Part shown: positions 10,301 to 34,700 of the stretch, one piece after another
How the letters are laid out: every line of letters starts with the position of its first letter
How positions within the stretch are numbered: position 1 is the stretch's first letter
Notes under the pieces: model-generated
The model's input: the letters and a program-made list of their open reading frames with translations, nothing else
Told to the model about the DNA's origin: nothing
Database searches by the model: none
Program-made: the position numbers and the translations under genes
Source of the DNA: Malacoraja senta
Lineage: Eukaryota
Direction: 5' to 3'
NCBI GenBank assembly: GCA_038087875.1
Contig: CM075985.1
Span: forward strand, 12,462,001-12,526,000
Length of the DNA stretch: 64,000 nucleotides

Positions 10301-13300
10301 GATGTGAGCCATGAAAGGACTATCTTTAATATCTTCATCATCACAAATTACATGCACTGCATAATCACCGGGCTCAGTGGGCCAGTATCTCACATCACAC
10401 GACCCGTCTCCTTTATCATCACACTCGATCTTGGCCTGTGAGGGACCTTCAATGGAGAAACCTGGACAAAGAAAGATACAACCAATCGTTCACAGAGATA
10501 AGAGGCCACAAGCCGTTAGACATTCACACAAACAAGACACGCACGCCAAGACAGGCAAGGCACAGAAAGCTCATCCTGATGTATTTCTAAGTCTCATTAT
10601 TGCATTCAATTGAATGCGGATTGAACAGGGAGGAAATGCAGCAAATACATTGGTTTCAAACCAGTGTTGACCTTAAAAGGGAAGCCTCTCCAGTATCTCA
10701 GGAAGCGACAACACTTACCTAAAGTCCCAACTTCAGTCCCAATGGCCTCCACTACAAAATCTGCTGACTTGCCCACAACGCCAGTCTCCAGTCCGGGTCC
10801 CCAGGCTCGCACCTTCTGGGCACCAGCTTCAGGTCCAACCTGCACCTCGAAGGGGCTGGAGGGCAACACATAGATCAGTGAACGCACTTCCAGCACAACA
10901 TCTCCTGGTACTGCATATTCACTTAGCATTGGTACAAAAGATTCCTGAAATTATACTGAAAACACAAACATGGAATCTCCCCTAGTGTTATGCCAAACAT
11001 TTATTTGTGTTGTCAAATTCTTTGAAACTGAAAGATTGACTCAAGGTCCCAGAGGAAGACAGACAAACAGAGATGGAGCCAGGGATGGGGAGAGGCCTTT
11101 CTGTGGATGTTAAGCAAAAATGTAACACTATTCATTTGATGTCCGAATTGAATGAACCACATGTTTGGTTAAGTATGACTCACCTTCTTGGAATAGCATA
11201 ACCGCCCCAGGTGATGGTCACCACATATTTGCCTCCAATCATCGGATGATATTCACATTCATAGATACCCTCGCCAATGTCACGAACCTTCACGGGTTCC
11301 TCTGTGCCTTCTGGAAAGAAGGATACGAGACCAGTGAGAGACTTTGGCCAATTGCTGCATTGCCCACAGGTGTCCCAATTCTTCTGCCTCAGCCCTGGTG
11401 CATTGCAAATCATTCACCAAGACAGTGACTCGGCATACAATCCAAGGACAAAAGCAAAATGCACAGGCGAGGTGTGGAGCAAAATAAAGAGAATGTCCAC
11501 AGCAGACTGGAACCAACCCGAAGTTAAAACAGGGAACACTTATTCCATCACTTACCACACACCCTCATCCCCCAACCACATTCTTCCATAACACATGCCA
11601 GGATATGCACGTCTCCACCACCAAACAATACAATGGCCCTGAAGTTCCAATGTCCAAAAAGCCTGCTAAGATGCACAGTCCCTACAAGCCAACTTACTGG
11701 GTCCTTTGACGACAACCTTCAGTTCCCCCGTGCCAGCTCCTTTGGTGAAGACTTTGAAGTCGGTCACTTCCTTGACTCGCACCCCTTTGGGCTGCAGGCC
11801 TCTCCCCGAGGCTCGACACGCATTGGGATTGCATGCTGCAAGAAACACGCGAGGCAGGTTAATGTCAACCCATCAAATGCACAGAATGCCCACCCAGAGC
11901 CTACAGTCCCATCACAGTAACCACATCTACCAGCATTCCAGATACAGGAGGAATCAAACCACCTGCTGGCTCAGCAAGCGAATAAACCAGCCGTGTGCAC
12001 TCCAAGACTGTCCCTCAGACTACACACACTAATCTCAGAGGGATATCAAGGCACCCACTCAGTACCCAGAACACTGGTAATACAGCAAGGATTGCCATTC
12101 ATGATCAATGGACCAGGAGAGAGAGAGGGCCCGACCTCTCCACGCACAGATGACAAAGCACCTACCTGTCCGCAAAAGAACCAGAACCGAGCAAGATTTT
12201 AATCACGTCTCGATCATACAAAAAGAGCAACCAGAAACAGTGGGAGGAAAAGTAATTTTGGAAAAGTATTCCCAAAGTTAACCAGTAATCTACAACCCAT
12301 TCCATTCAAGGCCTGGCAGGAGCAGAGCCATTCCAGCAGAACACGGCAGCCAACGTGCCCACCTAGAACCACAGCACAGCAGCTGATGACCAAGTTAGTA
12401 ACGACCAGGAACAGGCAGCACTAACCACCCTCTACCCTCAGAGGACTTGCACTGACTCGGAGCCAGTGACATCCAGGGCCTGAACTGGCCTCGGAGCCAG
12501 TACCCTCATGCACAGAGCAGGCAAAACCACCATCCCCCAAGCAGCCCCTTGGACAGACACGGTGTTTACAGATATCATGACCACTCATACAGACAAGCCC
12601 AACCAGCGTCCCCTTGTACAGACACAAGCAGAGGCAGCCCCTCAGTTCAGGCCAATACTAACGTGCTCGTTTGGGTTTGGGAGGAGGGGGCGGCGCTTTC
12701 TTCGCCCTGTCTGCCGGCGGGGTGTGGATGGACTGAGGAACGATCATAATTGGAGCTGGTGTAGCAGCCTGGGCCAGAGGGGGGGATCCTGAGGTCAGTC
12801 CGAGCACAGAGGAAGAGCATCATGAGGAAGAGAAGGAGGTAAAAAGGTGTGAATGGCAAAATCCAGACTCTTTCCTGCAGCACAGTGGGATGTGGCAACA
12901 TGGAGCTCCCTCCAAGCTGACAAATCCGCAAAACAGTCCCATTCTCAGTGGCCCAAACGCCACCCAATCTCAGTTTTACTACAACACTTTCACAGCCCTG
13001 GCTCTCAAATCACCACCATGGCCTCAACCTCCAAATGTCCACCAACACAGTGGACCCAGCTCCAGGCAGCCATGGTCCAAGCATTCTTGCAGCTTCACTA
13101 TTGTCCCATGCGAAACAGCCCAAACCTAACTTTCCTTCTTAAACAGCCATTCGCGTGCTAATTCAACAACTACGCACTAGCCATTTCTAACTTTCAGGAC
13201 CATCACGTTTTGTTAATCTTGTGTCCCCCCCACAACCAGGGGAGCAACTGCAAAGGTTTGATTTAAAAATGAGAGCCTGAGAAAGTAGGATCAACCACTC

Positions 13301-16300
13301 AGACCAGATTGTCAGATTCTTCTATCTTTCCAAAACCAACAATGAAGGCAGCTATTCCACAAAACAAAGGTGGTTTTATTTTCCTTAATATACACGAGTA
13401 AATTGATAACAGCTTCCCAATGAGATGCATCTGTTCATCACTAAAGTAATTTGTTGGCTGTTCTTGGCAGGCTTCATCGGACAAGATAACAGTCCAAGTT
13501 AACTGGTCAACTCTTGGAGAATAAAAACATATGCTCTCTCATTCTGCAGTCCTCAACCTTGCCCAAATGCCAAGTGCTTAATAGATAATGTCTGGAAATG
13601 AAGCTAGTCAATTGACATGGAAGCAGGCAGCATTTTCACGTCTGTTTAACCAAATCTCCAGCCGGGCGCAAGTAATTAATTTTTAACTCCAGCCCCCACC
13701 GTAATCATTTAATGAATGTTGACATGACTCAATTATTCTAGGAAATTAACACCTTATAAACTGAATCTGTATGGATAGCAAAGCAAGATTCCTCCCCAGA
13801 ATACTATATCTTAAATCATTTGGCTTGGTAACAGTGCTGAAGAGTCATGCAATTAGGGTCTAACCATAGAGACAAAACTGATACCACAGGATCAGATCAC
13901 CAATGGAACATTTCAATTAAATTATTGAACTGAAGAGTCATTGCCCAGGACAACAACACTGCCTATTCCCAGTCATATAATAACTTCAGGTTCCACATTA
14001 AAAGCCACCCTCATTCCCAAGAATATAAAATGTTTGACAGCACTGTTAGAAAACCAGCATTCTCATCAGGTGTTCAGGTTGATATTTTAACTCCCTCAGC
14101 TTCATATACAAAAAATATTAGTTATGCTGTGCACAGATGATCTTTTCGCAAAAGAGAAATAATAAATACACAATTAATGGTATTTCTGACATTAATACAA
14201 GGATCAAATACAATGTCAGTTTTCAAAGCGTCAGCCTTCAATTGCTCCCATCCTCCCTCACAGCCCACCTGCGCTCCTGATTTCTCGCTACTTTCACAAA
14301 TCCTACAATTCATAAACTCCATCATGCCAGGATACAAACCCCCTCCAACAAAAACTCACTCTCCCTGCCTCACCTCAGAGCATCATTCTCGTTCCTCTCT
14401 GTTCCCAAACATTCACCCTCCTTCACTCTCCCTGCATTATGTTATCTTTAATCCATCCCCATCTCTTAACCTCTCCTTTGGTTTCTTACCCCATCTGTCA
14501 CCCTTTGCTTGCTCGTCTCTTAGGGAGAGAAAGAGTAGAGGATAGGGGATGAATGAAAGGCAAAGGCTTCTTATACATGCAGTGTGTGGACCTTACCTTC
14601 AGAGATATTCACAGTGAAGGGGCTTTTGGGTATTGGTGCTCCAGCAAAAGTAACATGGACAGTGTGAGGACCTTCAAGCAGAGGTTTGTATGTGCAGCGG
14701 AGAACATTGTCTCCTTTATCCTCCAGAATCACCTCCACTATATCCCTCCGTCCCTGGGGATCAACAATGACCACTCCAACATCTCCTGACCCAGCACCTG
14801 AGGGGGGGAAAAAGGGCCATCATCAGTACAGTGACAGCAACAGCACACTGGCATCCCCATAGAGAAAGGAATTCATCCTTCACTCCGAGTCAAAATTAAA
14901 ATGCAATGCAATCAGGGGAGGGAGCCTAGATACATCTGGTCACTCAACACAACCCCTCTCCAGCCTCAACCTTTTCATCACAAAGGGGATACTAAACGCA
15001 AGAACACAACACCCTGGTGAAACAGTACAGATCTCTGCAGAATTAAGGGAGGCTTTCGAAGAGAAGTACAGATCCAAGAACTGGGCCAGAGGTCTTTTTG
15101 TTTGCAATATCACTTTTCAATTCTGACAGAGAACATTTATTCCAAAAAGTTGGTTTTAAATTTACTTTCAGATGTCATTTAATTGACATTCTGAATAAAA
15201 ACTTCAAATGTTGTCTGAGAAATTCCAAAGATGGCCACCCCACCTCTCCTAAGCTACAAACCTTTCTTCCCTCCCACCTCACCACGATTTCCAGTGGAGA
15301 TCCACACATCACTTTATTCCTCACCTGCCGTGTAAATGTCAAAGTACGTTGGCTTGTTGGCCACATTCCCATTCAGCTCCAGACCAGGGCCTTGAGCAGT
15401 CACCTTGTTGGCATCACCCAGAGCCATACCAATCTGGACTTTGAAAGGGCTTTTGTCAATTTGCTGTCCAGCAAATAAAACTGTTACCTGGAATCAAGCA
15501 CAAAGGTAACAGTATTAGAGCAAAAAAATTGACTGCTGTATACCAGTGGCTCCAATCTCCCCCCAAAAACGTCAAATTCCCCACATAGCCACGTGCACCA
15601 TTTTCATGCAGTGCACAAATCAATGAATGCAATCCGACTCGAGTGGTTGTGTTGTCAGGTTTGGAAGATTAAATGGCAATTTGATAGAGCTTGTGATAAT
15701 TCAGGAAGTCAGCGAGGTATTTGGAAACTATTTCCTCCAATTTGGTGGGAAGAGGAAATGCGGAAACAAACCTGCAAACCCTCCCAGCAAACCACAAAAC
15801 AAAAACATTTGGATTCTGGGTGCAAAATAGATCTTCAAAGACAAGATTGATAGTTTCCCATCCCCAGTTATAATCTAAGAACAGGGAGCAGAAATGAGAT
15901 GCAGATCAACCATTCGAGCAACAGAACTATTTCCTTAGGAACCCATGACAAAGGGTGGGGGCAATCGCAGTGCTCATTTCATCGAATAGCTTCTGACATG
16001 TAGTTCCCACACAGCCCCATTTGGTGATGAAAACATGGAAGGAATACCAGATCTACGGGTCAATGCACAAGCAAACCTACAAATGGTGCATTTTATACAC
16101 AGTGCAAAATGATGGGACCTGTGAAGATGGAGCCAAAGCTCATTCTGACTGAACTGGTATTTGGAATGATCAAAGACTTACCTTATGAAGGCCAGCAACT
16201 TTGGGTATGTAGGAAACAGAGTATGTGCGGTTCTTGTCATTGTTTGCAGTCACACGTGCCTATACAAAGAAAACAAAATGGTCATTCTATACTGCAACTG

Positions 16301-19300: not shown

Positions 19301-22300
19301 TAGGGAAATGCTAGAAACTATTTTGAGGAAGTGGTAACAGGACACCTAGAAAATATTAACAGGATTGAACAGTCAACATGGATTTATGAAAGTGAATTCA
19401 GTTTTGGCAAATTTTGCAGAGTGCATTTTGAGAACTTAAATAGTAGAGGAGACAAAGATAAGCCAGTTGATGCTGTGTAGCAGTCAGAAGGCTTTTATTA
19501 AGAGTTCACACTATTGTGGATAACATACTGGGATGCATCAAGGATTGGTGAATGGACAGAAAAAACGGAATCAATTGATTGTTTGGTAGTAATGCTGCAG
19601 GAATCGGTGTCTTTGCTCAGTTGAATCCACAATGATGCGAAATCAAATACAAATCCAAGTTTACTAACAATAGAAAGTTTGGTAGCAGTGTGTGCCGTCA
19701 GGCTTTCAGAGGATATGAAAAGATAAGGACATGGCGAAGGAAGCATGGGGAAAAAAGATTCAGTTTGGTTGCAAAAAAAATATAGAAAGTGGGTTTTTTT
19801 TCCCAAATGGCAAGAAAGCCCAAAAGATCTGACAGGAATTACTGAAAATTAATATGCAGGAACAACAAGCAATAAAGTTGGCTAATGGCATGGTTTGGTG
19901 GGTTTGTTATGCAAAGCAGGATGAAGTAGACTGGCTCTGTACTCAAGTTTGGAAGAAGAAAACGTGACCCATAAAATTCTCACATGGTTTAACAACAGCG
20001 ATGGAGTGTCTGGAAGCAGTGGTCAGTGTCAGAATAAAGGATCATCTGTTCAGGACAGACAAGAAATGTTGCCTCCCGGGAGGTCGAGTAAATCTTTGGA
20101 ATTCTCTGCAAGAAGACTGTGGAAGGTCAACATATTCAAGGCAGAGATCAATATTTTTAGAACTTATGGTAATTCAAGCCTTTGGGTGAGTACAGGAAAG
20201 TAGCACCAAGGGAAAGGATCAGCCTTGATCTGAAGAAATGGCCGAGCAGCCAACTTAATCAGATCCTTGTGGCTCTCAATAATCAAGTATTATTCACAGG
20301 AAAATGACTGCATTGAAGGAAATCAAAAAGGAACTCTCTGGTCAGTGATTGTCCAAGGCTTGATCAAAACAAGTGCTGGAACCAGCCCCCACCATGAGTA
20401 ATTCTCTCCCTGTGAGCCACAACTTCCCAGCTGTTGCAGAGATCACTCTCACTCATCTGGGAATTGCTGGCTGGGGCCACAGCCAGTGATATTTTCAGCA
20501 ACGTTCCAGTGTAACCAGGCAGCAGATCCCGAAAGATTTCAGAGCTAGTGTTTCCTCCGCCTCTCAATGCAGAATCAGAAGGATTTCCTCCAACACCGTA
20601 CCCGGATTGGCAGGGATCCCAGTGAGCCCACAGCCAGTCCAGAAAGAGTACTGCTGTCAGAGATTCCACTCGCGCTTAACCCCCCCCCCCCCTAAAGTTC
20701 CAATGCACAGCCCTCATCCAGATCAGATCAGCCACAAACTTCCAACTCGCTGCATTCCTAACTAATCCCTCCTCACACTCCACTACGAGTGTGGCAAGCA
20801 CTGACTACCAACGAATGGGAGCGAGAGAGACACAGCGAGTGTACCAGTCTGCTGCATGCATTCTGCGTAGATAGAAGGTGATGTAAAGTCCAAACTATTT
20901 GTTCAGACATAAGCTGACACAGGAGCTCATCTGGCTTGACTGAAGATTCATTCATACTTTACCATGAAAGGATACAGACACACAAGAGTTACCTTTCCAA
21001 ACAACTGAAACATTAGCAACTCTTCCCTGCTGCACGGTGAATAACCCGTACCCTAAATTAACAGTGACTCCATTCTGTATGCAGGGCAAGAATAATTTGT
21101 TTAAACCATGTGCCTAGAGACAATGGACAATCCCTACCCTGAGTGAACAAGGTATGTACAGTTACACCATATAGCCGTTACCCTGAATAAACTGTTGACT
21201 CTAAGTTACATTGAATAACCGGTACCCTGTATAAACACCATACAGAGGGTCTGACTGTCAAAGAATGACAGTCCAGTGAGATGTTAGTGATCTTTACCCT
21301 GAACAACAGTGACTGTATGGTTTGGGCAAATCATACAATGCAGGCAGTTTAGCCCTTCATGCTGCACCCGTGCTTAAAAGAGCAGCCAATATGTCTCATT
21401 TCCCTCACACCGTATTTTTTTCCCTTTCAATTGTTTATCCAATTCTTATCTGAAGTTGCAGCTGGATTCGTTTCCATACCTTTTCAGACAGGGCAATTCA
21501 GATAACTTTCTGCACGATGGAATGGAATACTTTATTGTCACATGTGACAAGGCACAGTGAAATTCTTTGCTTGCATACCCAAGGTATACAAAGAGTCGCC
21601 ACATACGGTGCTGACAAAGTTACAAAGTACCCCCCCCCCGGGCTCCTCCTTTATTCTTCTCCCCCCCACCCCACCCTACCACCCCACCCCCCCCCCCCAG
21701 CTCCTCCTTTATTCTTCTCCCCCCCCCTCCCTCCCTCCCTCCCCCATCCCAGTGGACCCCCACTCCAGGTCCTCCATTGTTCATCCAGTGGTGCAGCCAG
21801 TAGATTTGCCGTCTTAAAGCACCACAGACCCAGGTTCGATCCTGACTCTGGGTGTTTCTGTATGGAGTTTGTACATTCTCCCTGTGACAGTGGGGATTTT
21901 CTTTGGGTGCTCCATTTTCCTCCCACATCTCCAAAGACATGGAGGTTAATTGGCTTCTGTAAATTGCCACTAATGTGTAGAATAGAACTAATGTACGGGT
22001 GATTGTTGGTTGGCACAGATTCGGGAGGCTCAAGAGCCCGTTTCCACACTGTGTCTCCACACTATATTATATTCTACCCTGCCCCCCAAAAAGCCTTCCA
22101 TGATTTTGAAAACCTGCATCAAATCTTCCTTAATCCTCTGCTCCAGTTCTCAGCTTTGATTCTTTCCATACAAGATTCCTCATCACAGGAAACTGTACTA
22201 AACCCCCTATAGACACCTCATCATAACTCTGCCATCTAATAATGTGTGAAACACAACCCACTAATCCAGAGAGCATATATGCTTAATAAACTTTAAATTA

Positions 22301-25300
22301 AAAAAAATCTAATATATTGCATTCCATGTATTACACAAACAAATTCCCGTCCATCTCACATTTTACCTTTGATGATTATATATGCATTCAAAATTAATGT
22401 TCCATAAAATGTGATCATTTAGCTCATGAAATCTGTACTCCAAAATGTACCACTTCAATGCATAAATATCATCTGCCCACCATTTACCCATTTCTATTCT
22501 TTACTGTTGATTGTTTGTGTTTTGTGGCATCTGCAAACTTTAAAATGACGAACTCTAGAGATGTCATCATTAAAGCGACTCTTATATTAACCCCGATATC
22601 ACCATTCTAGACTTCTCGATGCTCCAGAAAAACACTATTTAATCAGGCTACACTGCTTTACTATTCACACCGCTGTCGTTTCTTCAGCTTTGCTCAGCAG
22701 TGGTTATTTTGTCGATTGCCTTTTGAAAGGAAAACATATGCAAACCATACAACCCTCAATACTTCAAATTAGCCACAAAATCATTTCAACATGCAGGTAG
22801 ACTGGGAAAATCAGGTTGGTACTGGACCCCAAGAAAGGCAGTTTGTGGAGTGCCTCCAAGATGGTTTCTTAGAACAGCTTGTACTGGAGCCTACCAGAGA
22901 GAAGGCAATTCAGGATTTAGTGTTGTGTAATGAACCGGATTTGATAAAGGGAACTTGAGGTTAAGGAGCCATTAGGAGGTAGTGACCATAATATGGTAAG
23001 TTTTAATCTACAATTTGAGAGGGAGAAGGGTAAATCAGAGGTGTCAGTGTTACAGTTGAACAATGGAGCCATGAGGGAGGAGCTGGCCAAAGTTGACTGG
23101 AAAGATACCCCAGCAGGGATGACAGTGGAACAACAATGGCAGGTATTTCTGGGAATAATACAGAAGGTGCAGGATCAGTTCATTCCAAAGAGGAAGAAAG
23201 ATTCCAAGGGCAGTAAGGGGCGACTGTGGCTGACAAGGGAAGTCAGGGACAGTATAAAAATAAAAGAGAAAAGTACAAAGCTGAGCTGAAAGCAAGAGGA
23301 TTGGGTAATGTTTCAAGAGCAACAGAAGATAACTAAAAAGGCAATACAGGGAGAAAAGATGAGGTAAGCTAGCCAAGAATATAAAGGAGGATGGTAAAAG
23401 CTTCTTTAGGTATGTGAAGAGGAAAAAATTAGTTAAGACCAAAGTTGGACCCTTGAAGATTGAAAAAGGTGAATTTATTATGGGGAACAAGGCAATGGCA
23501 GATGAGTTGAACAGGTACTTTGGATCCATCTTCACTAAGGAGGACACAAACAACCTTCCTGATGTACTAGTGGCCAGAGGATCTGCGATGACGGAGGAAC
23601 TGAAGGAAATCCACATTAGGCAGGAAATGGTGTTGGGTAGACTGATGGGACTGAAGGCTGATAAATCCCCAGGGCCTGATGCTCTGCATCCCAGGGTACT
23701 TAAGGAAGTGGCTCTAGAAATCGTGGACACATTGGTGATAATTTTCCAATGTTCTATAGATTCAGGATCGGTTCCTGTGGATTGGAGGGTAGCTAATGTT
23801 ATCCCAACTTTTAAGAAAGGCGGGAGAGAGAAAACAGGGAATTATAGACCAGCTAGCCTGACATCAGTGGTGGGGAAGATGCTGGAGTCAATCATAAAAG
23901 ATGAAATAGCAGCACATTTGGATAGCAGTAGCAGGATCGGTCCGAGTTAGCATGGATTTATGAAGGGGAAAGCATGCTTGACTAATCTTCTGGAATTTTT
24001 TGAGGATGTAAATGGACAAGGGAGAGCCAGTGGATGTAGTGTACCTGGACTTTCAGAAAGCATTTGATAAGGTCCCACATAGGAGATTAGTGGGCAAAAT
24101 TAGGGCACATGGTATTGGGGGTAGAGTGCTGACATGGATAGAAAATTGGTTGGAAGATAGGAAACAAAGAGTAGGGATTAACAGGTCCCTTTCAGAATGA
24201 CAGGCAGTGACTAGTGGGGTACCGCAAGGCTTGGTGCTGGGACCGCAGCTATTTACAATATACCTCAATGATTTAGATGATGGGATTCAAAGTAACATTA
24301 GCAAATTTGCAGATGACACAAAGCTGTGTGGCAGTGTGAACTGTGAGGAGGATGCTATGTGAATGCAGGGTGACTTGGATAGCTTGGGTGAGTGGGCAGA
24401 TGCAGTTTAATGTGGACAAATGTGAGGTTATCCACTTTGGTAGCAAAAACAGGAAGGCAGATTATTATCTAAATGGTGTCAAGTTGGGAAAAGGGGAAGT
24501 ACAACGGGATCTGGGGGTCCTTGTTCATCAAGTCAATGAAAGTAAGCATGCAGGTACAGCAAGCAGTGAAGAAAGCGAATGGCATGTTGGCCTTCATAAC
24601 AAGAGGAGTTGAGTATAAGAGCAAAGAGGTCCTTCTGCAGTTGTACAGGACCCTAGTGAGACCACACCTGGAGTATTGTGTACAGTTTTGGTCCCCTAAT
24701 TTGAGGAAGGACATTCTTGCTATTCAGTGAATACAGTGTAGGTTCACAAGGTTAATCCCCAGGATAGCGGCACTATCATATGCTGAGAAAATGGAGCGGC
24801 TGGGCTTGTATTCACTGGAATTTAGAAGGATGAGAGGGAATCTTATTGAAACATATAAGGTTAAGGGTTTGGACACGCTAGAGGCAGGAAACATGTTCCC
24901 GATGTTGGAAAGAGCTGAGTAGATGAGGAAACACTATTTCACACAGAGAGTTGTGAGTCTGTGGAATTCTCTGCCTCAGAGGGCGGTGGAGGCCGGTTCT
25001 CTGGATACTTTCAAGCGAGAGCTTGATAGGGCTCTTAAAGATAGCAGAGTCAGGGGATATGGGGAGAAGGCAGGAACGCGTTACTGATTGTGGATGATCA
25101 GCCATGATCACATTGAATGGCGGTGCTGGCTCGAAGGGCCGAATGGCCTACTCCTGCACCTATTGTCCATAACGCATTTGCCTTCCATTGATTAACCCAT
25201 AATTCTATTGCCAATCAGTTACATGCCAGATTATCCAAGGAGGTTCCACACCGCAGACATTAAACTCACTGGGTTGAACAAACAGCAATACAGCACATGG

Positions 25301-28300
25301 CCTTTAACCTGAAAAGAATCAGATGGAAACACACGCTGACCCAGTAATCTGGGTGGACCTTTCTTGACCAGCAGGGATGCAATGCATCACTATTGATGCC
25401 TGTGTTTTTAATCTGGTTCTGATTTCATGTGCTGTGTATCTGTTTGTTCAACCCAGTGAGTTTGACATCTGCAGTGTGTAACCTCTTCGAATAACCTTGG
25501 GTCTAATTGAAAGTTGCCAAATGAAGTATGAACAAAGAAATGGAAGGTAAACATGTTAAAAATGGCTTGTAGTTCTGGAGAAACCCAAGGGTAAACATGT
25601 TAAAATTGAATCTGTGGCTAATTTACAGTAACAAGAGCATTGATGAAGTTGGCTTGGTTAGCATTTGTTTACCGTGCTGCATGACAACGTCTATAATCCC
25701 ATTTACTAGCCTAGGCCCATAAAACTACCTAGGCAATGCAACAAGATATTTACCAACCCCAGTTAAAAAATATATTTTATGCTCCTTTTAATCTTTTTTA
25801 TCGATGAAATTCAATCTTTGCCCCTGGTTCTTAATCTCATCACCAAGGGAAATATGCTCTTCCTATTAACTCTCTTTTATACACCACACTCAAGACCCCT
25901 CCAGTCTTCCCTGCTCTAAATAAATCAACCATTGCATGTTCAATTTTATTTCATAGCAAAAATTACCCGGTCCTTGCAAATCTCCTCTGTACCCTCTCCA
26001 GTACAAGCAGCTCCTTCCTGCAAATGTGGTGACCAGAACTGTATGCAGTATTCAGGTTGTGGTCTAGTGTTGCATACAGTTTTGGCATCACCTCCCTGCT
26101 CTTAGATTCGGTCTTAGTTAATAAAAGAATCACATATGGCTTTTTAACCACTACCTTGAAGTATTTGCAGCCATACTTCTCAATTTTCTCCTGTTTATTG
26201 GGTATTCTCTTCCCCTGCTCCAATTGCATTACCTCACTATTTTGGATCAAACTTAATTGGCAATATCCAATTAACTAAACCATCTACATCTTTCAATTTT
26301 ATTCCCCCCTCCTTCTCTACCTTCCAAACCTACATTTAATCTCATATCTACCTGACAAGATGGCTTCAAACCTCCCCAAATCCATTGCAAACCCAGTGGG
26401 TGGCACCAAAAGCACTGTTTTCTTCAAAGTCTACCTGCTGGACACCCTCGATCCTGTACTCAATCCAACATGGAAACATAGAAAATAGGTGCAGGAGTAG
26501 GCCATTCGGCCCTTTGAGCCAGCACTGCCATTCAATATGATCATGGCTGATCACCCAAAATCAGTACCCCAGTCCTGCTTTCTCCCCATATCCCTTGATT
26601 CCGTTCATCCCAAGAACTATTTCTAACTCTCTCTTGAAAACATCTAGTGAATTAGCCTCCACTACCTTCTGTGGCAGAGAATTCCACAGAGAATTCCACA
26701 GATTCACAACTATCTGGGTGAAAAGATTTCTTTTCAGGGTTTGGTACAAATATGGAACACGTCCCTTGGCTACTCAGCCTCCCACTTTTTCAGCAGCCAC
26801 TCATTGGTATTCTAGCCCTGGCACCAGGGTGGCAATATTCCATCCTGGAATCACATCTACAAGTATGGAAGCATTGCCCAGTGAAATCCCCTATTACTGC
26901 TGCTCTCCTCTCCGCAGAGTCGACTCTCCCGTGAGATCATGACATTGACCGTCTGCACTACAGAGGGGAAGCCTCACCCTGTCAGTTCTCAGAAACAAGC
27001 ACTGATTAGAGAGCATACCCCTTGGGTTTCTCCAGAACTACAAGCCAGGTTTTGGTTTGAGGAGTCTGGCAATCATCCAGTCCCTCAAGCTGTGGGACGA
27101 TCATTCTCTACAATGTGCTAGCCACAAACACTCAAACGGACTGCAGCAACGTTAGCAGTCAAGGTCCAAACCCCCAGACCTCAAGCTCTCCCAGCTGACA
27201 ACACTCCCAGCACCCGTGTTTCTCCAAAACACAGGAATTGTCCCAGAGTTTCCATACGACACAGGATGCACATCCCATAGGTCAAAGGTGGCCTGCTTCA
27301 ATTTATTAGATGAACTCACCAAGCAGAAATAAAACCCGTTTAATAACAAAAGGCACCCACCAACCAGCACCTCTACTCACATTCGGAACCCAGCCCAACA
27401 CTACCATTTCTTGCTTCCTCATAGGCCACTCCTTTTCTTTTCAGAGGAGAACACTGACCAATATTATTTCCACTTCTCCCAACATGCACTGAAACAACAG
27501 TCCAAAACACAAGCTAATTACAGAGAAATGAATCAGTCTGAAGAAGGGTCTCGACCCTAAACGTCATAGAAACATAGAAAATAGGTGCAGGAGTAGGCCA
27601 TTCGGCCCTTCGAGCCTGCACCGCCATTCAATATGATCATGGCTGATCATCCAACTCAGTATCCCATACCTGCCTTCTCTCCATACCCCCTGATCCCCTT
27701 AGGCACAAGGGCCACATCTAACTCCCTCTTAAATATAGCCAATGAACTGGCCTCAACTACTTTCTGTGGCAGAGAATTCCAGAGATTCACCACTCTGTGT
27801 GAAAAATGTTTTTCTCATCTCGGTCCTAAAAGACTTCCCCCTTATCCTTAAACTGTGACCCCTTGTTTTGGACTTCCACAACATTGGGAACAATCTTCCT
27901 GCATCTAGCCTGTCCAACCCCTTAAGAACTTTGTAAGTCTATAAGATCCCCCCTCAATCTTCTAAATTCTAGCGAGTACAAGCCGAGTCTATCCAGTCTT
28001 TCATGACTTCTGAATCATCCGAGTCATCCATGACTTCTCTCCAAAGATACTGCCAGCATCAAAATCCAAGTATGGATCGAGCATCTTGGACAATACAGCT
28101 CACCTCCTCCATGACACACTGGTCAACCTGAGGAGCACCTTCAGAAACAGACTGATGCCACCAAGATGCAGCACAGAACACCACAGGAGATCTTTTTTTC
28201 TCTGTGGCTATCAAACTGTACAACTCCTCCCCCTCTACCATGGGGTGGACAGACTCCCCCCTCTCCAATCTTTGCATATCCTCAATCCTTTCCACTTGTC

Positions 28301-31300
28301 ACTTTAATTCCATGTTTCATGTATCTTGTGTGTTATGACTGTTGGCAGACCAATTTCCCTCCTGGGATAAATAAAGTTCTATCGCATCACTTTTCAGTCT
28401 TTCCCTATCAAGACAAGGAGACCCTAGGCATGCTCATTCTTTTGTTTTTCCTGGTATCATTCAAATACTTTCTCTGGTGCCATTTTGTTACCTATCAACC
28501 CCCACCTCCCCCCCCTCCCCCCAAATCTATGTACCTCACATCTACCAATTCCTCCAAAATAACCTCACATGTAACAACCACGTCCATCTCAATTCGCAGA
28601 AGTTTCACATAAAATCACTAATCCTCTCCACAGTTGGCTATCGCGGGCTCCTTGCTGCCAGCGAGTCAATCTCAAGAGGCAGCTAAGACCAGAGTTGGAT
28701 GGGAACCCCAAGGTAAAATGGATCACATGTACGGAGGTGGTCACTATACTGAGTGAATGACAATTAACAACAACAGAAGCGTAAAGAATACAAGCAGACA
28801 TTGTACATTTGGCCTTTTTGTAACAGTGGTTGTAGCCAACCATTCACTTCAGTAACCATTTAATAATTTGATCTCCACTGCTTACTGTGGCAGAGAATTT
28901 CTGCAGGTTCACCACCCTGGATTGCATACGATCAACTGCATCTTCCCTGTCAAATGAGAGATACCATTCCGGGAATCAGTTTAGTAAAACTTGGTTGCAC
29001 TCCCTCACCAGTTCCAAGCCGCACACTAAACACCAGATATGGTCTCCAAGCCCAGGGTAGCTGTCGCTAGACATCCCTGCCCCTGAACTGATGTAAATGT
29101 GCCACTTGGCTTCCTGGTTACTTATTTTCAGCAACTGATATGGCAGGACACTCAGTTCATATTGCATCTTCCAGTTTCATCCAATCTATCACCATTGTGG
29201 TAATAATCTCTATTCATTTTTTGGGGAACCTAAATAGATAATGTCAAACTTTATCTGCCAAACATTAGCCCAATCACAGAACTAGTCTAAGTCACAGTGG
29301 AGCCCTTTTTGCCTGCTACTCAGTCACCCCATCTCCCCCAGTCATACACAGACTTGAGGCAACTAAATGCAACATCTCTCATCTAAAGTCATTGAGTTAC
29401 ATTAAGATCCAAACAGCAAATCCCTGTGGTACTCCATTAGTCATTGCCCATGTTTATTCCTGCTCCATTTCCTGACAAACTCTCAATCTTCGTCAGACTA
29501 TTGACCTCAATCCCATGCACTTTAAATTTGTACACTAATCTTATCATTTTATCAAAAGCCTACTAAAAAATGAAATTGACCACTACCGGTCCTACCTTAA
29601 CTAATCTGTAAACTAAATTCTCATACAAAATTCCATTAAATTTGTTAAGCATGATTTCGCCTTCATAAACCCTTGCCAACTATGTCCAATCTTGTTAATG
29701 TTTTCCAAGTATTCTGCTGTTGTAACTGATGCCAGCACTTTCTCAACTGGCATTTACTTTTACTGGTCTGTAATTCCCTCTTTTTCCACTGCCTTTCCTT
29801 TCTTTTAAAAAGACCTCCACACTGCAGCAATTGCTCCAGTATAAAGAATTCTAGATGATGACCACTATTTCCAGGGCCATTTCCTTTAGTACTCTGGTAT
29901 GTAGATTATCAGGGCCTGGTAATCTATCATCTTTTAGTGCAAGTGAAATTAAACAGAAGTATTTCCTAACAAATACAGGCAGTGTCCAACTCCCTCTAGG
30001 GCTTGGTTTTCTCACCCATCTGTGAGGTTATCCGTGTCCTGTGTGGAGATAGAACCAAAGAATGCAGTTAATTGTTCTTCTACTTTGTTCCAAATATAAC
30101 TCCCCCCATTTCTGACAGCAGAACACCTACATTTGCCTTCACTGACCTTAATCTCTTCAAATAGTCAAAGCAGATTTTACAGTCCAGTTTTTATCACTTG
30201 TGCAAGCTTACTCCACTTCCCTTTCAAAACATACACGTTCTTTTTTGCAAGGAACATTAGCTTAGATTAGAGATACTGCACAGAAACGGGCCCTTTAGCC
30301 CACCAAGTACACTCTGATCAGCGATGCTCACATACTAACTCATACCGACACACACCATGACAATTAGCCTACAAACCTGTACATTTTTGGAGTGTGGGAG
30401 GAAACCGCAGCATCTAGAGAAAACCCACGAAGGTCACATGGGGAACGTACAAACTCCGTACGGACAGCACCCGGATCGAACCTGGGTCTCTGGCGCTGTA
30501 AGGCAGCAACTCTACTGCTGTGCCACGATGCGCCCATTCAGAATGAACGGTCTGCATATAATCACAGCAAGTCCAGTTTTCTTTCCCAAGATGTTGCCCA
30601 ACTTACTGACCATTCCCGACATGTTCTCTTACTTCACTGTTCAAACCCTGGATAAGACTGCAAACCTCCAGTGGTCTGGAATAATCAAAATGAATTGTGT
30701 GCAACAAAGCAGTAATCGATTAATGGCGCAACACAGCAGGAACTTCAGCACATTCACTAACAGAAGCATGGAAATTGAGCTTGTTCAGCCATGAGGTGAA
30801 TAGCAACAGTGATTCTGGAAAAAGGTGAATGTCAGACAGCAAATGGAGGAAGTTTCTCATTTTCAACAAAACAAAATCACAAAATTAATTAGACTGAATG
30901 GAAAGAATTTTTGGCATGGTGTTGAAATGATGTGGGAGGCACAAGGAGGTACAGAAGGATTAAAATCTCAGGGAGGAAGGGAACACCTAGCTGGAATTAA
31001 AACCGACACCAAAGGGAAAGAGCCAGGGGAAGAGCAACAGCCAGGAACCACAGGAAACCGCAACACTCTGGGATGGGGCCAGTCACCACAGGACCAGGCT
31101 ACAGCTCAGCCACTACTGGCACCAAAACCATTGGCAATGAAGGAGTACAAATCCACAGATAGACACAAAAAGCTGGAGTAACTCAGCGGGATAGGCAGCC
31201 TCTCTGGAGAGAAGGAATGGGCAACGTTTTGGGTCGAGACCTTTCTTCAGGACCACAGCCAGGTTGTTGTCTGGACCTGGTTATGCCAGCTAATTTGGCC

Positions 31301-34296
31301 TTTTTGACATTTAACAACTTAATTGACACTCCTGATGCAGTTGGCCATGCAGGAGTCTGTAACCCTCTAAAGTCTCCCATTTCACACTAAAGCTGCTTCA
31401 ATACAGGTGGGGCAGGCCGGGCCCTTGGGTATTTGACAGTCATGCAAACCCTACAGGCAGGCTCTTGCAAGGAGCGGCGCTGGGGGACAGCCGGGACATG
31501 GCATGCTGTCAGACTCCAAGGTTATCACTGACACATTCCTGCCAGCTGCCCGAGCAGCTGTATATAGCTCGAGCTCTGCACAGGGTGGGGGAAGGGGGCA
31601 AGGAGAGCGACTTGGGACAGGCGTGACTTTGCAAATGTGTGGGGAATATTCTGGAAGGGCAACCCGTTGAACCACAGCACCGCAAGACAGCTGGAGCCCG
31701 ACAGCTACCAACAGGAATGACTTCCTGAATGGATGTCTGGGTGGAGGGCGGGTGAAGGGGGAAATGAAAGGAAAATTGGAAACAAAAAGGACAGAAAACA
31801 AATTACTGCAGACTGAACCTTGTTATTTCACTGATCAAACTGATTCAAGGGGCCAAGTAAGTTCATGGCTGATCATTTGTTGCTGTCTCCTGGACAGGGG
31901 CCAAGACGGTTTTAACTCCAGACCAAGATTAAATGAGCAACCAAGACAAAGGGTTGAAGGTTGGGAGCTACTCCCCTTATATTCACAATTCAGAGATTGA
32001 AATATTGATCCAAAAGATGAATTTAGGTACAGTAAATGCAAGGATCACTTTCATGTGACAGGATACATGAACATGGAACACAGGATACATATCCTGTACA
32101 AAAATGTACAGGATATGTACATTTTTCTACCCCAAACACTAGGAGAAAAATCACTAATGTGTGGGCATGCAGATGAAAGCTTTCAGATCCCAATTGGTAA
32201 TTTCCAATTAGTGTAGGAGAGATTAAGGAGAGATACTGTAACAAGCACACCCACTAACTTCACAGTAGCACAAGAGCATGTGACTCATGCCAGGACTCAC
32301 TATCATCCCTTCTCGCAATTTAATCCCCTTAGACTCATCAGCTGCTACTAGTAACTATGAAACAAGAATGTGGAGGAAAACGGAAAACATTTTCCAACCA
32401 ACCCTGGCCTTACAACAACAACTTGCAGGTCGTAGCATCTTCAATGTAGCAAAGTTCCCCCAGGGATCTCCATAGGATCAGTTACCAGACAAAAACTGAC
32501 ATCATGCGACAGATGACAAAATGTTTGGTCAACGAGGTAGTAGTGGAGAGGTAGAGAGGTCGGGAACCAAATGACAAACTACAGAACGCCATGGTCCAGG
32601 TCAGTCTCACTGTCTGAGATGCTGTGGTGAAGATAAGAGTTATTGAAGTTTCCTTATCCACTCAAAAGTACTATAAATGGGGTTTTTTTTAAGACTGGCC
32701 CTTTCACATCCTTATAATGCCCAAACCACTTGCCAGCGACCATATTGAGGAAGTGATTTGTTGCATTTCAGGAAACACGGCAAGTAGTTTATCTGGAACA
32801 CAATTCCAACATCATTAATCGTGATCAATCATTTAATCACCTGCATCGGTGAAGATGGTTGAAATATAAGTATCAGTCAGAACACTGGGCAAAATCTCCA
32901 CTACTCTTGGGTTGGGGGACAATCTCATCTCCTGGGACTTGGGTTCAATTCTGACCTCAGGTGCTATCTGTGTGGGGTTTTCACATTCCCTCAATAACAA
33001 CATAGGTTTCATCCCGTGCTCCCACATCCCAAACACCTGCTGATACTACTACTACTCGCTACTGTGAGCTACCCCTCAGTGTACGTAAATAGCAAAAATA
33101 ACGTTAAAAAGTGTGTTTTGCAAGGCTAGGAATAGGAGGTAGAATTGCACTGTTGGGAGATGGTGTGGAATCAATAGGCTGAACCTGCTCCTGGGTCAGA
33201 ATGCAAGCACTTTTCCAACAGTGCTGTTGGATTTAACAATGCCCATGGATTCACAGCACAGCATCATCAGATGACCTTCTGGGTCAGGGCAATGGGTCCC
33301 TTTATCCACACACACTCATTGCCAAATTGCTAATTTTAGCTACAGCAGTACTAGCCGTTATAAGACATGATAAGATTCTGTATAAATAGAAATTTGTCCA
33401 GATTTAGTGTATTACGGAATTCAGAGAACGATCCAGGATAGAAGGCAGAAATTGGAAGCAGTTTGCCTCATTTCCTCCAAACAGTTCACGCCCTCCCTTC
33501 AAATCCCATTCGCTGCCAAAAGTTACAACAAAATAAGCTGCTTGCCCGGACCTTCCGGACTCCATCTCAGATCGTAAAAGTACATCTGAACCACGCTGGT
33601 GAACTTGTTCATCACCCCAACTGTGTCCCCAGTTACAAACCATTGTGCCGCTGGAGGAGATGTTTCTCCTTATTCTGCTGAAGCTATGGGTTCCCTCAAA
33701 GTATCGAAGGAACTGCCCCAGGAGTAGGCTGAAGGCAAGGGGGTTTAGTGTGGGTTCCCTGCTCCCCACAGGGTGAGCGTGTGGTCTTGGATCTGACACC
33801 TGGTTTGTCCCAGGCGCCCACTGTAAGCGAGACCCATTGTGAAGGCTGGGCGGGAGGGGATGGGAGAGGAGAGGGGGGGAGGGGGGGTATGGGCGGGGAA
33901 AGAGCGAGAGGAGGAGAACAAGGGGATCGATCACACGGCGGGGTACCTACCGATAGAGACTAGTTTAATCCTCTCTCGGTCTAGGAACTCCAGGGCCACC
34001 GAGACGTTCTCCAGCTTCATCTGACGGAAGTTGGGCCGCGAGTGGTACTTTCTGTACATCTTCTTCTGGCTGAGGACCTCGAGGAGCCCGATCAGCCTCA
34101 GGCCGTCGCCCAGGTCCTTCTGCAGGTCGCCGATGCGCTTGTTCATACACTTGAGGTGCTCGTTGCACCAACGGGTGAAGGTGTTCTGCTGGATCTTCTT
34201 CCAGGGCGCGTCCTCCGCCAGGTCCTTCTCGGTTGCCGGCATCTCGCCGTCGTCCTGCCCGTTGGCGGCAAGTCCTTGTTGATCCATGGAAGTCAT
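1211..34296 (-). CDS. FLNC: Filamin-C, 5' part (coding exons 1-22; gene continues past the left edge)
   Basis: 22 exons with AG/GT boundaries. Sizes match the recalled vertebrate filamin structure (249, 98, ~148, 119, 78, 163, 201, 138, 127, 137, 194, 114, 144, 124, 161, 91, 170, 118, 263, 598, 174) except exons 4, 13, 21 and 22 (see findings). FLNC-type peptides: [57 protein letters not shown]. Neighbouring CCDC136 supports FLNC over FLNA/FLNB. Confidence 0.93.
1809..2405 (-). CDS. FLNC: FLNC exon 21 (1-nt deletion)
   Basis: 597 nt versus 598 expected; [11 protein letters not shown]...GAG[T][17 protein letters not shown]...GPGVEPR. Confidence 0.9.
3415..3677 (-). CDS. FLNC: FLNC exon 20
   Basis: 263 nt, [21 protein letters not shown]...PPDPTK. 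Confidence 0.93.
4316..4433 (-). CDS. FLNC: FLNC exon 19
   Basis: 118 nt, [19 protein letters not shown]...VQGLNN. Confidence 0.93.
4698..4867 (-). CDS. FLNC: FLNC exon 18
   Basis: 170 nt, [11 protein letters not shown]...VKYTAVQQ. Confidence 0.93.
5361..5451 (-). CDS. FLNC: FLNC exon 17
   Basis: 91 nt, [30 protein letters not shown]. Confidence 0.92.
7040..7200 (-). CDS. FLNC: FLNC exon 16
   Basis: 161 nt, [32 protein letters not shown]...FADQ. Confidence 0.93.
7605..8110 (+). mobile_element. Rex1/L2-type LINE 3' fragment
   Basis: LQRVVDAAQ...DHSHP...TTRFMKSF. Confidence 0.6.
8323..8446 (-). CDS. FLNC: FLNC exon 15
   Basis: 124 nt, [41 protein letters not shown]. Confidence 0.93.
8916..9059 (-). 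CDS. FLNC: FLNC exon 14
   Basis: 144 nt, [10 protein letters not shown]...NVPNSPFR. Confidence 0.92.
9279..9391 (-). CDS. FLNC: FLNC exon 13 (1-nt deletion)
   Basis: 113 nt versus 114 expected; VKAFG[P][32 protein letters not shown]. Confidence 0.88.
10268..10461 (-). CDS. FLNC: FLNC exon 12
   Basis: 194 nt, [31 protein letters not shown]...FPEK. Confidence 0.93.
10719..10855 (-). CDS. FLNC: FLNC exon 11
   Basis: 137 nt, [23 protein letters not shown]...EVGTL. Confidence 0.93.
11184..11310 (-). CDS. FLNC: FLNC exon 10
   Basis: 127 nt, [10 protein letters not shown]...[10 protein letters not shown]. Confidence 0.93.
11698..11835 (-). CDS. FLNC: FLNC exon 9
   Basis: 138 nt, [23 protein letters not shown]...KGP. 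Confidence 0.93.
12663..12788 (-). CDS. FLNC: Putative FLNC cassette exon '8a', proline-rich 42-aa insert
   Basis: Polypyrimidine tract plus CTGACCTCAG acceptor; C|GTTAGT donor; 126 nt, phase 1-1, open in the FLNC frame: (G)[41 protein letters not shown]. Confidence 0.75.
14597..14797 (-). CDS. FLNC: FLNC exon 8
   Basis: 201 nt, [18 protein letters not shown]...[10 protein letters not shown]. Confidence 0.93.
15325..15487 (-). CDS. FLNC: FLNC exon 7
   Basis: 163 nt, [15 protein letters not shown]...PTYFDIYTA. Confidence 0.93.
16182..16259 (-). CDS. FLNC: FLNC exon 6
   Basis: 78 nt, [26 protein letters not shown]; TAG / GTAAGT. Confidence 0.92.
16813..16931 (-). CDS. FLNC: FLNC exon 5
   Basis: 119 nt, [18 protein letters not shown]...GHTEE. 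Confidence 0.93.
17465..17606 (-). CDS. FLNC: FLNC exon 4 (3' end and donor missing in this sequence)
   Basis: [47 protein letters not shown]. The expected GP-G and GT donor are absent, so the low coordinate is approximate. Confidence 0.85.
17841..17938 (-). CDS. FLNC: FLNC exon 3
   Basis: 98 nt, [32 protein letters not shown]; CAG / GTGAG. Confidence 0.93.
18674..18922 (-). CDS. FLNC: FLNC exon 2
   Basis: 249 nt, [24 protein letters not shown]...DNCAP; CAG acceptor, G|GTAAG donor. Confidence 0.95.
19290..20240 (+). mobile_element. Highly decayed CR1 LINE
   Basis: Residual similarity to CR1 RT (CAACATGGATTTATGAAA) and to the 3' end. Confidence 0.55.
21785..22050 (+). mobile_element. tRNA-derived V-SINE (HE1-like)
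   Basis: A box TGGTGCAGCCAGT, B box GGTTCGATCC, V-domain TGGAGTTTGTACATTCTCCC...TTCCTCCCACAT, CR1-like tail. Confidence 0.75.
22790..25170 (+). mobile_element. CR1-clade LINE (HER1-like), 5'-truncated, disrupted ORF2
   Basis: [57 protein letters not shown]; 3' UTR ending GGCCTACTCCTGCACCTATT. Confidence 0.93.
25229..25497. repeat. Fold-back / MITE-like inverted repeat (~70-bp arms)
   Basis: AAACTCACTGGGTTGAACAAACAG...CAGCACATG at 25230-25299 is mirrored at 25426-25497. Confidence 0.75.
26472..26730 (-). mobile_element. CR1 3'-end fragment
   Basis: Reverse complement of the CR1 3' UTR; tail reads CATAGAAA on the plus strand. Confidence 0.8.
27567..28000 (-). mobile_element. CR1 3'-end fragment
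   Basis: Reverse complement of the CR1 ORF2 end and 3' UTR, with (CATAGAAA)n tail. Confidence 0.82.
28075..28384 (+). mobile_element. Rex1-type LINE 3' fragment
   Basis: [13 protein letters not shown]...RRSFF; ends GGGATAAATAAAGTTCTATC. Confidence 0.65.
30265..30532 (-). mobile_element. V-SINE (HE1-like)
   Basis: Reverse complement of the same A box, B box and V domain. Confidence 0.75.
32930..33200 (+). mobile_element. Decayed V-SINE
   Basis: GGGTTCAATTCTGACC...TCCCACATCCCAAA. Confidence 0.5.
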
Positions 34297-34700
34297 GGCC
34301 GGGATGTGGCGGCGCTCAAACTTTGCTCAAACTTTGCGCGGGTCGGTGCACAAGCCGCGAGTCCGCGTTTGCCTCTGCCCCCAAACACCAAGCTGTGGTC
34401 CACTCCGCCCGAAGGCTGTTCTCCTCGGCTCCCTCTCGCCGAATGATCGCGCTCCCAGCCCAGCCGCACTTTTTAATCAGTGACGGCTGCTCCGAGTTCA
34501 CGTCAGAGCCCAGGATCGCCAGGAATCCCGAGGCCATGTCCATATAAACCCCGCACCGAATCAAGTGTTCGCGGCCCGCGGCGACCGCCCCTCCCCGCCC
34601 CCGGGGCTAATCATAGCCACCCGCTCATTGCGCAGCGCCGCTCACTCCGGCCTTATTTTTAGAACAGCAAACGACTCGAGGGCACGAATGGGTTAATCAG
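33880..34700 (-). promoter_or_regulatory. FLNC CpG-island promoter with MEF2 site, GC box and TATA-like element
   Basis: Markedly CpG-rich compared with the rest of the window. YTAWWWWTAR match TTATTTTTAG at 34653-34662; CCCCGCCC at ~34593-34600; CRE half-sites at ~34481-34505; minus-strand GATTAAAAAG at ~34469-34478. Confidence 0.7.
33951..34296 (-). CDS. FLNC: FLNC exon 1 (CH1)
   Basis: MTSMD...[32 protein letters not shown]...IKLVSI; donor G|GTAGGT; 346 nt, phase 1. Confidence 0.95.

What the first reader, a model, noticed from the sequence alone, without database searches (positions are those of the whole stretch)
12663..12788. Extra in-frame proline-rich FLNC cassette exon between Ig repeats 2 and 3
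Seen: a 126-nt phase-1/1 segment with a good acceptor and a GTTAGT donor, open only in the filamin frame and absent from the ORF track in that frame. It adds 42 aa, [41 protein letters not shown], between ...NISE and CNPNAC. Knowledge: the canonical human FLNC has no exon here as I recall, and PPxPxK/PxxPxR are SH3-ligand patterns. Inference: this is a switchable third hinge or adaptor-docking module in rod 1. The homologous intron of mammalian FLNA (after the 201-nt exon, c.1429) carries a PTBP1-repressed poison exon (recalled, should be verified), so this intron may be an ancient regulatory site of the filamin family. Similar inserts may already exist in predicted fish FLNC isoforms.
Basis: partly seen in the sequence, partly recalled or inferred. 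Interest (0 to 1): 0.78.

Follow-up and report, generated by a model that had tools for sequence, protein, structure and literature searches.

The report
Real optional proline-rich exon in FLNC
A 126-base stretch inside an intron of a skate's muscle filamin gene (FLNC) is a genuine optional exon, spliced into a third to a half of the transcripts in RNA from two related species, and it adds a floppy proline-rich 42-residue linker between the protein's second and third repeats; what the linker does is still untested.

Summary
The segment 12788..12663 (minus strand) has an AG acceptor and a weak GTTAGT donor. It keeps the filamin frame and replaces one Ala with Gly + 41 residues + Pro.

The pattern alone is not significant: the same 2761-nt intron holds 109 frame-preserving AG..GT candidates. 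The RNA data settle it. A 186-nt contig from a related species joins 14597^12788 and 12663^11835 exactly, at a depth similar to the exon-skipping joint. A second species shows the acceptor-side joint at 30-60 times the intron background.

Ig4 and Ig5 exons match human filamin-C better than filamin-A. The downstream exon aligns to the first residues of the FLNA Ig3-5 crystal construct, so the insert sits exactly in the Ig2/Ig3 linker.

The added peptide is 33% proline. It carries class I and II SH3-type motifs, an APPPPP run and three S/T-P sites.

The hinge or docking function is inferred only. The FLNA poison exon and its PTBP1 repression are confirmed from papers. Its position in the homologous intron could not be verified. 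Conservation beyond close relatives could not be tested.

The parts
14597..14797 (-). Constitutive 201-nt FLNC exon, the C-terminal part of Ig repeat 2. It ends ...SPFTVNISE plus the first base (G) of a split codon; donor GTAAGG.
   Evidence: Sequence. RNA contigs of X1 and X2 cover it at depth 68 and 564 and join it to 15325 upstream. It matches filamin Ig repeats in the PDB.
12663..12788 (-). Alternative cassette exon, 126 nt, phase 1/1. It encodes Gly + 41 residues + Pro in place of Ala: 14 of 43 residues are Pro and 4 are Lys, with SH3-type motifs, APPPPP and three S/T-P sites.
   Evidence: Translation. X1 contig of 186 nt (depth 59.9) is laid as 30 nt of upstream exon + the cassette + 30 nt of downstream exon. 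X2 contig (depth 184) joins the upstream exon to 12787..12722.
12789..12845 (-). Acceptor region: CU-rich tract (CCUUCUCUUCCUC..CUCUUCCUCUGUG, two UCUU) interrupted by purines just before the AG. This is a moderate acceptor and a candidate PTB-type binding tract.
   Evidence: Sequence. The acceptor is used in RNA. Protein binding is inferred only.
12657..12662 (-). Weak donor GTTAGT after exon end CAC, with mismatches to the U1 consensus at -1 and +3.
   Evidence: Sequence. The joint 12663^11835 with GT..AG ends is seen in X1.
12507..12512 (-). Single UGCAUG (RBFOX-type hexamer) 151 nt downstream of the donor; a candidate enhancer only.
   Evidence: Motif scan. There are 3 in the whole intron, so one within 250 nt is not significant.
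12534..12641 (-). Cluster of G-runs (five GGGG start positions within 250 nt downstream of the weak donor, against an intron mean of 1.45 per 250 nt); candidate intronic splicing enhancers.
   Evidence: Motif scan. Function is inferred.
11698..11835 (-). Constitutive exon that starts Ig repeat 3: (A/P)[17 protein letters not shown]...; donor GTAAGT.
   Evidence: Sequence. It aligns from residue 3 of the FLNA Ig3-5 crystal chain 4M9P. RNA joints link it to 14597, 12663 and 11310.

Best explanation
This is a genuine, regulated, protein-coding alternative cassette exon of the skate filamin-C gene. When it is included, the one-residue junction between Ig repeat 2 and Ig repeat 3 (..NISE-A-CNPNAC..) becomes a 43-residue, proline- and lysine-rich segment that is almost certainly unstructured.

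Shown: the splice joints, the coexistence of included and skipped forms, the preserved frame, and the position at the domain boundary.

Inferred: the insert acts like the known filamin hinges. It would be a flexible spacer that loosens the link between the actin-binding head (ABD-Ig1-Ig2) and the rest of rod 1. Its [12 protein letters not shown] stretch and S/T-P sites may also give a docking or phosphorylation site (SH3 domains, profilin).

Inclusion is probably set by a weak donor (CAC|GTTAGT), helped by downstream G-runs and a UGCAUG, and held back by the CU-rich tract upstream.
For: The RNA contig of X1 (186 nt, depth 59.9) carries both predicted joints with GT..AG ends. The skipping joint is in the same run at depth 53.3, so inclusion is roughly one half. 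In X2 the inclusion joint has depth 184 against about 560-625 for the constitutive exons and 3-6 for intron pieces.

X1 has no depth on any other part of the intron, so intron retention and DNA contamination are excluded.

Between the window and organism A the cassette has 3 substitutions in 125 nt and no indel: one synonymous, plus R>K and H>R. The neighbouring constitutive exon has 8 in 198.

The related DNA run X4 keeps 0.47 of the sampled 31-mers in the cassette region against 0.40 in the constitutive exon, while its contig differs from the window at about 4.6% of bases plus many indels.

Other support: FLNC assignment, the Ig2/Ig3 boundary, composition and motifs, and no second copy of the region in the window, so no sign of a repeat element. 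A hinge that is alternatively spliced is a known filamin device: FLNC hinge 1.
Against: No RNA run of the window's own species was available; the evidence comes from two close relatives at 95-99% identity. In X2 only the acceptor-side joint is seen. Its contig stops at 12722, so the 3' part of the exon in that species is unresolved.

Many other RNA runs that hold the upstream exon did not hold cassette words. This could mean tissue specificity, low depth or divergence.

No conservation outside close relatives could be shown: both protein searches with the 41 residues were blank, but they were uninformative by design. The regulatory motifs are not statistically significant. No functional data exist for flexibility, binding or phosphorylation.
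Confidence: 0.75

Rival explanations
1. Real splicing, but a young, lineage-restricted exonisation of intron sequence with no selected function. The C-rich stretch happens to be stop-free and is tolerated because it falls in an inter-domain linker.
For: The segment is open in two of three minus-strand frames because of its composition. Chance candidates abound in the intron. No hit outside close relatives. The species compared are too close for the 3 substitutions to prove constraint.
Against: Inclusion of about 25-50% in highly expressing samples of two species is far above splicing noise. There is no indel in the cassette, while the intron pieces of X2 and X4 carry many. The 31-mer retention equals that of a constitutive exon.
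Confidence: 0.15
2. One reading: the insert is primarily an adaptor-docking module, an SH3 or WW ligand that recruits a signalling or Z-disc partner to rod 1, rather than a mechanical hinge.
For: Two class I ([KR]xxPxxP) and two class II (PxxPx[KR]) matches and an APPPPP run are packed into the last 14 residues.
Against: Such patterns arise automatically in any Pro/Lys-rich stretch. There is no PPxY or PPLP motif for WW domains and no [FWYL]PxxP for EVH1. No binding data exist and no partner is known for this position.
Confidence: 0.25
3. A dosage-regulating (poison-type) exon like FLNA exonN, whose inclusion lowers FLNC output through nonsense-mediated decay.
For: Filamin paralogues Flna and Flnb have PTBP1-repressed poison exons. 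A CU-rich tract lies upstream and a UGCAUG downstream here.
Against: The exon is 126 nt, keeps the frame and has no stop. The included form is as abundant as the skipped form in X1, which is not expected of a decay target.
Confidence: 0.02
4. Not an exon at all: a chance open stretch, with the apparent signal coming from DNA or unspliced RNA in the runs.
For: The tool flags X2 as 'probably DNA', and the pattern alone is not significant.
Against: Contigs skip 1808 and 827 bases exactly at GT..AG. X1 has zero depth on the rest of the intron. In X2 the cassette depth is 30-60 times the intron pieces.
Confidence: 0.02

Closest known systems
Filamin hinge 1 cassette (human FLNC exon 31/32, between Ig15 and Ig16; also alternatively spliced in FLNB)
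   Same: It is an optional exon of about 30-40 residues that lies exactly between two Ig repeats and encodes a non-Ig flexible segment. [quoted passage not shown]
   Different: The position is Ig2/Ig3 near the actin-binding head, not Ig15/16. The sequence is unrelated. Calpain sensitivity and any effect on flexibility are untested here. No such exon is listed among the two main human FLNC transcripts.
FLNA exonN (and the Flnb counterpart): PTBP1-repressed, RBFOX2-enhanced poison exon
   Same: It is an alternative exon hidden in an intron of a filamin paralogue in the 5' part of the gene. Here too a CU-rich tract lies upstream and a UGCAUG downstream. That is a phase-1 junction just before CNPSAC, which would be the same intron.
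   Different: ExonN is 58 nt and brings a premature stop that triggers decay. This exon is 126 nt, in frame and coding. The shared intron position was not verified in any paper held, and no sequence comparison was possible.
Proline-rich SH3/profilin-binding linkers in cytoskeletal proteins (for example the XPPPPP motifs of Ena/VASP and formins; established knowledge)
   Same: It has an APPPPP run flanked by basic residues, matches to class I and class II SH3 consensus, and a low-complexity, presumably polyproline-II-prone stretch.
   Different: There is only a single short run, with no repeated array as in formin FH1 or VASP. Binding is untested.

Membership tests
Frame-preserving alternative cassette exon | Both splice sites are used in mature RNA, with canonical GT..AG introns on each side | tested here: met
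   The X1 contig joins 14597^12788 and 12663^11835, and the ends read CT..AC on the + strand. X2 shows the first joint only.
Frame-preserving alternative cassette exon | Included and skipped forms coexist | tested here: met
   In X1 inclusion has depth 59.9 and the skipping joint 14597^11835 has depth 53.3. In X2 the figures are 184 against about 600.
Frame-preserving alternative cassette exon | Length is a multiple of three and there is no stop in the gene's frame | tested here: met
   The exon is 126 nt and gives 43 codons without a stop when joined to the flanking split codon.
Frame-preserving alternative cassette exon | Frame-preserving conservation in other species | tested here: inconclusive
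   In organism A the exon is intact, with 1 synonymous and 2 conservative changes and no indel. The species are only about 4% diverged. Deeper taxa could not be searched (searches were uninformative).
Filamin-C orthologue | Closer to FLNC than to FLNA/FLNB over orthologous domains | tested here: met
   For Ig4 the score is 137 bits to human FLNC against 127 to FLNA. For the first half of Ig5 the orthologous domain scores 61 against 33 bits. FLNB has no structure for these repeats, so it is excluded only indirectly.
Filamin-C orthologue | 82-residue insertion in Ig repeat 20 | not testable with these tools
   The 3' part of the gene lies beyond the start of the window.
Filamin hinge | Non-Ig segment placed exactly between two Ig repeats | tested here: met
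   The upstream exon ends with the SPFxVxV-type last strand. The downstream exon aligns from residue 3 of the FLNA Ig3-5 crystal chain.
Filamin hinge | Confers flexibility and is calpain-sensitive | not testable with these tools
   This needs biophysics and protease assays. Only the composition (33% Pro) is known.
SH3-domain ligand | Core motif [KR]xxPxxP or PxxPx[KR] | tested here: met
   KKAPPPP and KAPPPPP match class I; PPPPPK and PPKPKR match class II. The specificity of such matches in a Pro/Lys-rich stretch is low.
SH3-domain ligand | Demonstrated binding to an SH3 domain | not testable with these tools
   No experimental data exist.
Poison exon homologous to FLNA exonN | Introduces a premature stop or frameshift | tested here: not met
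   The exon is in frame and has no stop.
Poison exon homologous to FLNA exonN | Lies in the orthologous intron | tested here: inconclusive
   No held paper states the intron of exonN. The original paper is not held.

The most novel reading that the evidence does not exclude
The intron between the Ig2 and Ig3 exons is an ancient regulated splice site that predates the FLNA/FLNB/FLNC duplication. Under this reading, the coding proline-rich cassette of skate FLNC and the PTBP1/RBFOX-controlled poison exons of mammalian Flna and Flnb descend from one ancestral alternative exon. That exon was kept as a protein module in one paralogue and turned into a dosage switch in the others.
Probability: 0.12. 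Interest if true: 0.65.

Novelty: new member of a known kind. Interest (0 to 1): 0.45.

Why it matters
Filamin C is a major Z-disc and costamere crosslinker and a leading cardiomyopathy and myopathy gene. Its only recognised protein-level splice switch is hinge 1.

A second optional unstructured linker, placed two repeats from the actin-binding domain, would change the reach and angle of the head. It could also add a proline-rich docking or phospho-regulated site.

If the exon proves conserved beyond skates, or homologous to the FLNA/FLNB poison exons, it would show how a single alternative-splice site can serve either protein diversification or dosage control. It would also point to a place in the human FLNC intron worth inspecting for cryptic-exon variants. 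If it is confined to skates, it is an ordinary lineage-specific isoform.

Tried and rejected
1. Chance test. Counting AG..GT, frame-preserving, stop-free segments in the intron gave 109 candidates, so the sequence pattern alone cannot support the claim.

2. Word-indexed protein search with the 41 residues found nothing. Only proteins of 23-72 residues were eligible, so full-length isoforms could not be hit.

3. Exhaustive phmmer search against 1.84 billion 50%-identity representatives gave 0 hits. Filamin isoforms collapse into a few representatives and the query is short and low in complexity, so this blank says nothing.

4. A full-length spliced query could not be given by reference, so annotated isoforms in other vertebrates could not be checked.

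5. Self-BLAST of the cassette +-300 nt against the window found no second copy, so there is no sign of a repeat-element origin within 64 kb.

6. Splicing-factor motifs (UGCAUG, UCUU, YGCY, G-runs) are present but not significantly enriched.

7. The intron position of FLNA exonN could not be found. The original paper is not held, 'c.1429+182' occurs in no held paper, and reviews give no exon numbers.

8. A literature search for any filamin insert between repeats 2 and 3 found nothing relevant.

9. Earlier notes of this scan hold nothing on filamin.

10. The bacterial promoter/terminator scan is irrelevant to this eukaryotic locus.

Full report
**What is in the sequence**

The gene runs on the minus strand.
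- The 201-nt exon 14797..14597 ends ...SPFTVNISE plus a G, followed by GTAAGG.
- The next constitutive exon starts at 11835 with CA TGC AAT..., so the normal junction reads ..NISE-A-CNPNAC...
- In the 2761-nt intron between them, 12788..12663 is preceded by ...CTGACCTCAG and followed by GTTAGT. It is 126 nt long.

The coordinates, phase, splice dinucleotides and peptide are therefore all correct.

One detail is wrong. The segment is not open only in the filamin frame. A second minus-strand frame and one plus-strand frame are also stop-free, because the segment is 44% C.

**Is it more than chance?**

On sequence alone it is not. Enumerating every AG..GT segment in this intron that is a multiple of three and stop-free in the required phase gives 109 candidates of 30 nt or more, and about 55 of 60 nt or more.

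The donor is weak: CAC|GTTAGT mismatches the U1 consensus at -1 and +3. The acceptor tract is interrupted by purines. The case therefore rests on RNA and conservation.

**RNA evidence**

A 31-mer search with the cassette +-22 nt found:
- two runs labelled RNA, from two other organisms (X1 from organism A, X2 from organism B);
- a run holding all the words (X3, organism C);
- runs of two more organisms (D and E) holding a third to a half of the words.

The upstream constitutive exon was held by many more RNA runs. These included three further runs of organism B that did not hold cassette words.

Laying X1-X4 on 11000-15600 gave the following.
- **X3** is one colinear contig at depth 34 with 2 differences. 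It is DNA of the window's own species.
- **X4** is one colinear contig at depth 4.7 and about 95% identity. It is DNA of a relative.
- **X1** covers only exons, with zero depth on the rest of the intron. It has a 186-nt contig (depth 59.9) laid as 14626..14596, then 12787..12663, then 11835..11806. That is the cassette spliced to both neighbours at exactly the predicted joints, with GT..AG ends. A 60-nt contig (depth 53.3) carries the skipping joint 14597^11835.
- **X2** carries the skipping path (contig depth 625) and a 96-nt contig (depth 184) that joins the upstream exon to 12787..12722.

The tool flags X2 as 'probably DNA'. However, its exon depth is 500-600 against 3-6 on three intron pieces, and it carries four spliced joints. 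It is RNA with a trace of unspliced material. The cassette lies 30-60 times above that trace.

Inclusion is thus roughly one half in X1 and a quarter to a third in X2. These contig depths are crude.

Caveats:
- No RNA run of the window's own species was available.
- In X2 the contig stops at 12722, so the donor side is unresolved in that species.

**Conservation**

Organism A differs from the window at three places in the cassette, with no indel:
- 12694, synonymous;
- 12707, R>K;
- 12725, H>R.

The neighbouring constitutive exon differs at eight places in 198 nt.

The intron pieces of X2 and the X4 contig carry many indels. In organism D the cassette region keeps 0.47 of the sampled 31-mers against 0.40 for the constitutive exon. 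Its contig as a whole differs at about 4.6% of bases, which would leave about 0.2 of the words.

This is consistent with exon-like constraint. But the species are close and the word sample is small, so it is weak evidence.

Deeper conservation could not be tested. The word-indexed protein search admits only targets of 23-72 residues for this query and found none. The exhaustive search of 50%-identity representatives found none, which is expected for a short low-complexity query whose carriers cluster with ordinary filamins.

**Which gene, and where in the protein**

The window holds the 5' part of a filamin. It contains a first coding exon at about 34326..33934, calponin-homology exons and Ig repeats running down to position 1.

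Where the PDB holds both paralogues, the match is better to human filamin-C than to filamin-A:
- Ig4: 137 against 127 bits.
- First half of Ig5: 61 against 33 bits for the orthologous domain, with 33 of 37 residues identical to FLNC.

The FLNC-specific insertion in Ig20 lies outside the window.

The downstream exon aligns from residue 3 of the FLNA Ig3-5 crystal chain. The upstream exon ends with the last-strand motif of an Ig repeat. The cassette therefore sits exactly in the Ig2/Ig3 linker.

**What it encodes**

Of the 43 residues, 14 are Pro, 8 Ala and 4 Lys. The last 14 residues hold:
- two class I SH3 patterns (KKAPPPP, KAPPPPP);
- two class II SH3 patterns (PPPPPK, PPKPKR);
- an APPPPP run.

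There are three S/T-P sites. There is no PPxY, PPLP or EVH1-type motif. The region has no second copy in the window.

**How it most likely works**

Shown: optional inclusion lengthens the Ig2-Ig3 junction from one residue to 43.

Inferred: the insert is unstructured and acts like a filamin hinge. It would add slack between the actin-binding head and rod 1, with a possible docking or phosphorylation role for the basic polyproline end.

The model is hinge 1 of FLNC, an optional inter-repeat exon that is removed during myogenesis and returns under cardiac stress.

Regulation is probably through:
- the weak donor;
- a cluster of downstream G-runs (five GGGG starts in 250 nt against a mean of 1.45);
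- one UGCAUG 151 nt downstream;
- an upstream CU-rich tract with two UCUU.

None of these is statistically compelling.

**The FLNA parallel**

Held papers confirm the following.
- Mammalian Flna has a conserved poison exon (exonN). PTBP1 represses it in neural progenitors, it is included in neurons, and a deep intronic patient variant that raises its inclusion causes periventricular heterotopia.
- ExonN is 58 nt, and RBFOX2, PTBP1 and PTBP2 bind its flanks.
- Flnb has a PTBP1-repressed poison exon too.

No held paper states which intron carries exonN, and the original paper is not held.

The arithmetic fits: c.1429 is the first base of codon 477, a phase-1 junction just before CNPSAC. This is recollection, not a test.

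The present exon is not a poison exon, because it is in frame and abundant.

**Novelty**

A review lists only two main human FLNC transcripts, differing in hinge 1. Two literature searches found no description of an insert between repeats 2 and 3.

Earlier notes of this scan on the same genome (a skate) report similar hidden cassette exons in other genes that turned out to be real and already modelled by annotation pipelines. The same may hold here, but I could not check it.

I rate it a new member of a known kind: an alternatively spliced, unstructured inter-domain linker. Interest is moderate. It would rise if the exon proves old or homologous to the FLNA/FLNB exons.

Noticed in passing
window 12722 (run X2): In organism B the cassette-containing contig ends at 12722, and no contig of that run was laid on 12663..12721. 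The donor side of the exon may differ there (polymorphism, an indel in the CCN-rich part, or another donor).
   Followed up: no
window 53981-54900, minus strand: Two adjoining open stretches (221 and 128 residues) look like a decayed Tc1/mariner-type transposase (helix-turn-helix part, then ...DNDPKHTA...SPDLNPIENLW...). They lie upstream of FLNC.
   Followed up: no
window 19500-33400, both strands: FLNC intron 1 (about 15 kb, between the first coding exon near 33934 and the exon near 18929) is filled with fragments resembling LINE-type reverse transcriptase. Near-duplicate pieces occur at about 24050-24730 and about 63020-63790.
   Followed up: no
window 50597-50750 and flanks to about 49700: A 154-base N gap is bordered by a long simple repeat that reads as (LSPP)n / (SL)n in translation. 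The gap was left untouched.
   Followed up: no
window 58948-59148 and 60624-61217, minus strand: Open stretches with a coiled-coil-like, charged sequence (..LEERYRNSQEERSQLELQLRQFKEEVHKLKG..) lie upstream of FLNC. They may be exons of a neighbouring gene, which I did not identify.
   Followed up: no
window 12630-12642, minus strand: A short GC-rich hairpin (5 pairs) lies 20-30 nt downstream of the weak donor. It was found by the terminator-like scan, and its relevance to splicing is unknown.
   Followed up: no
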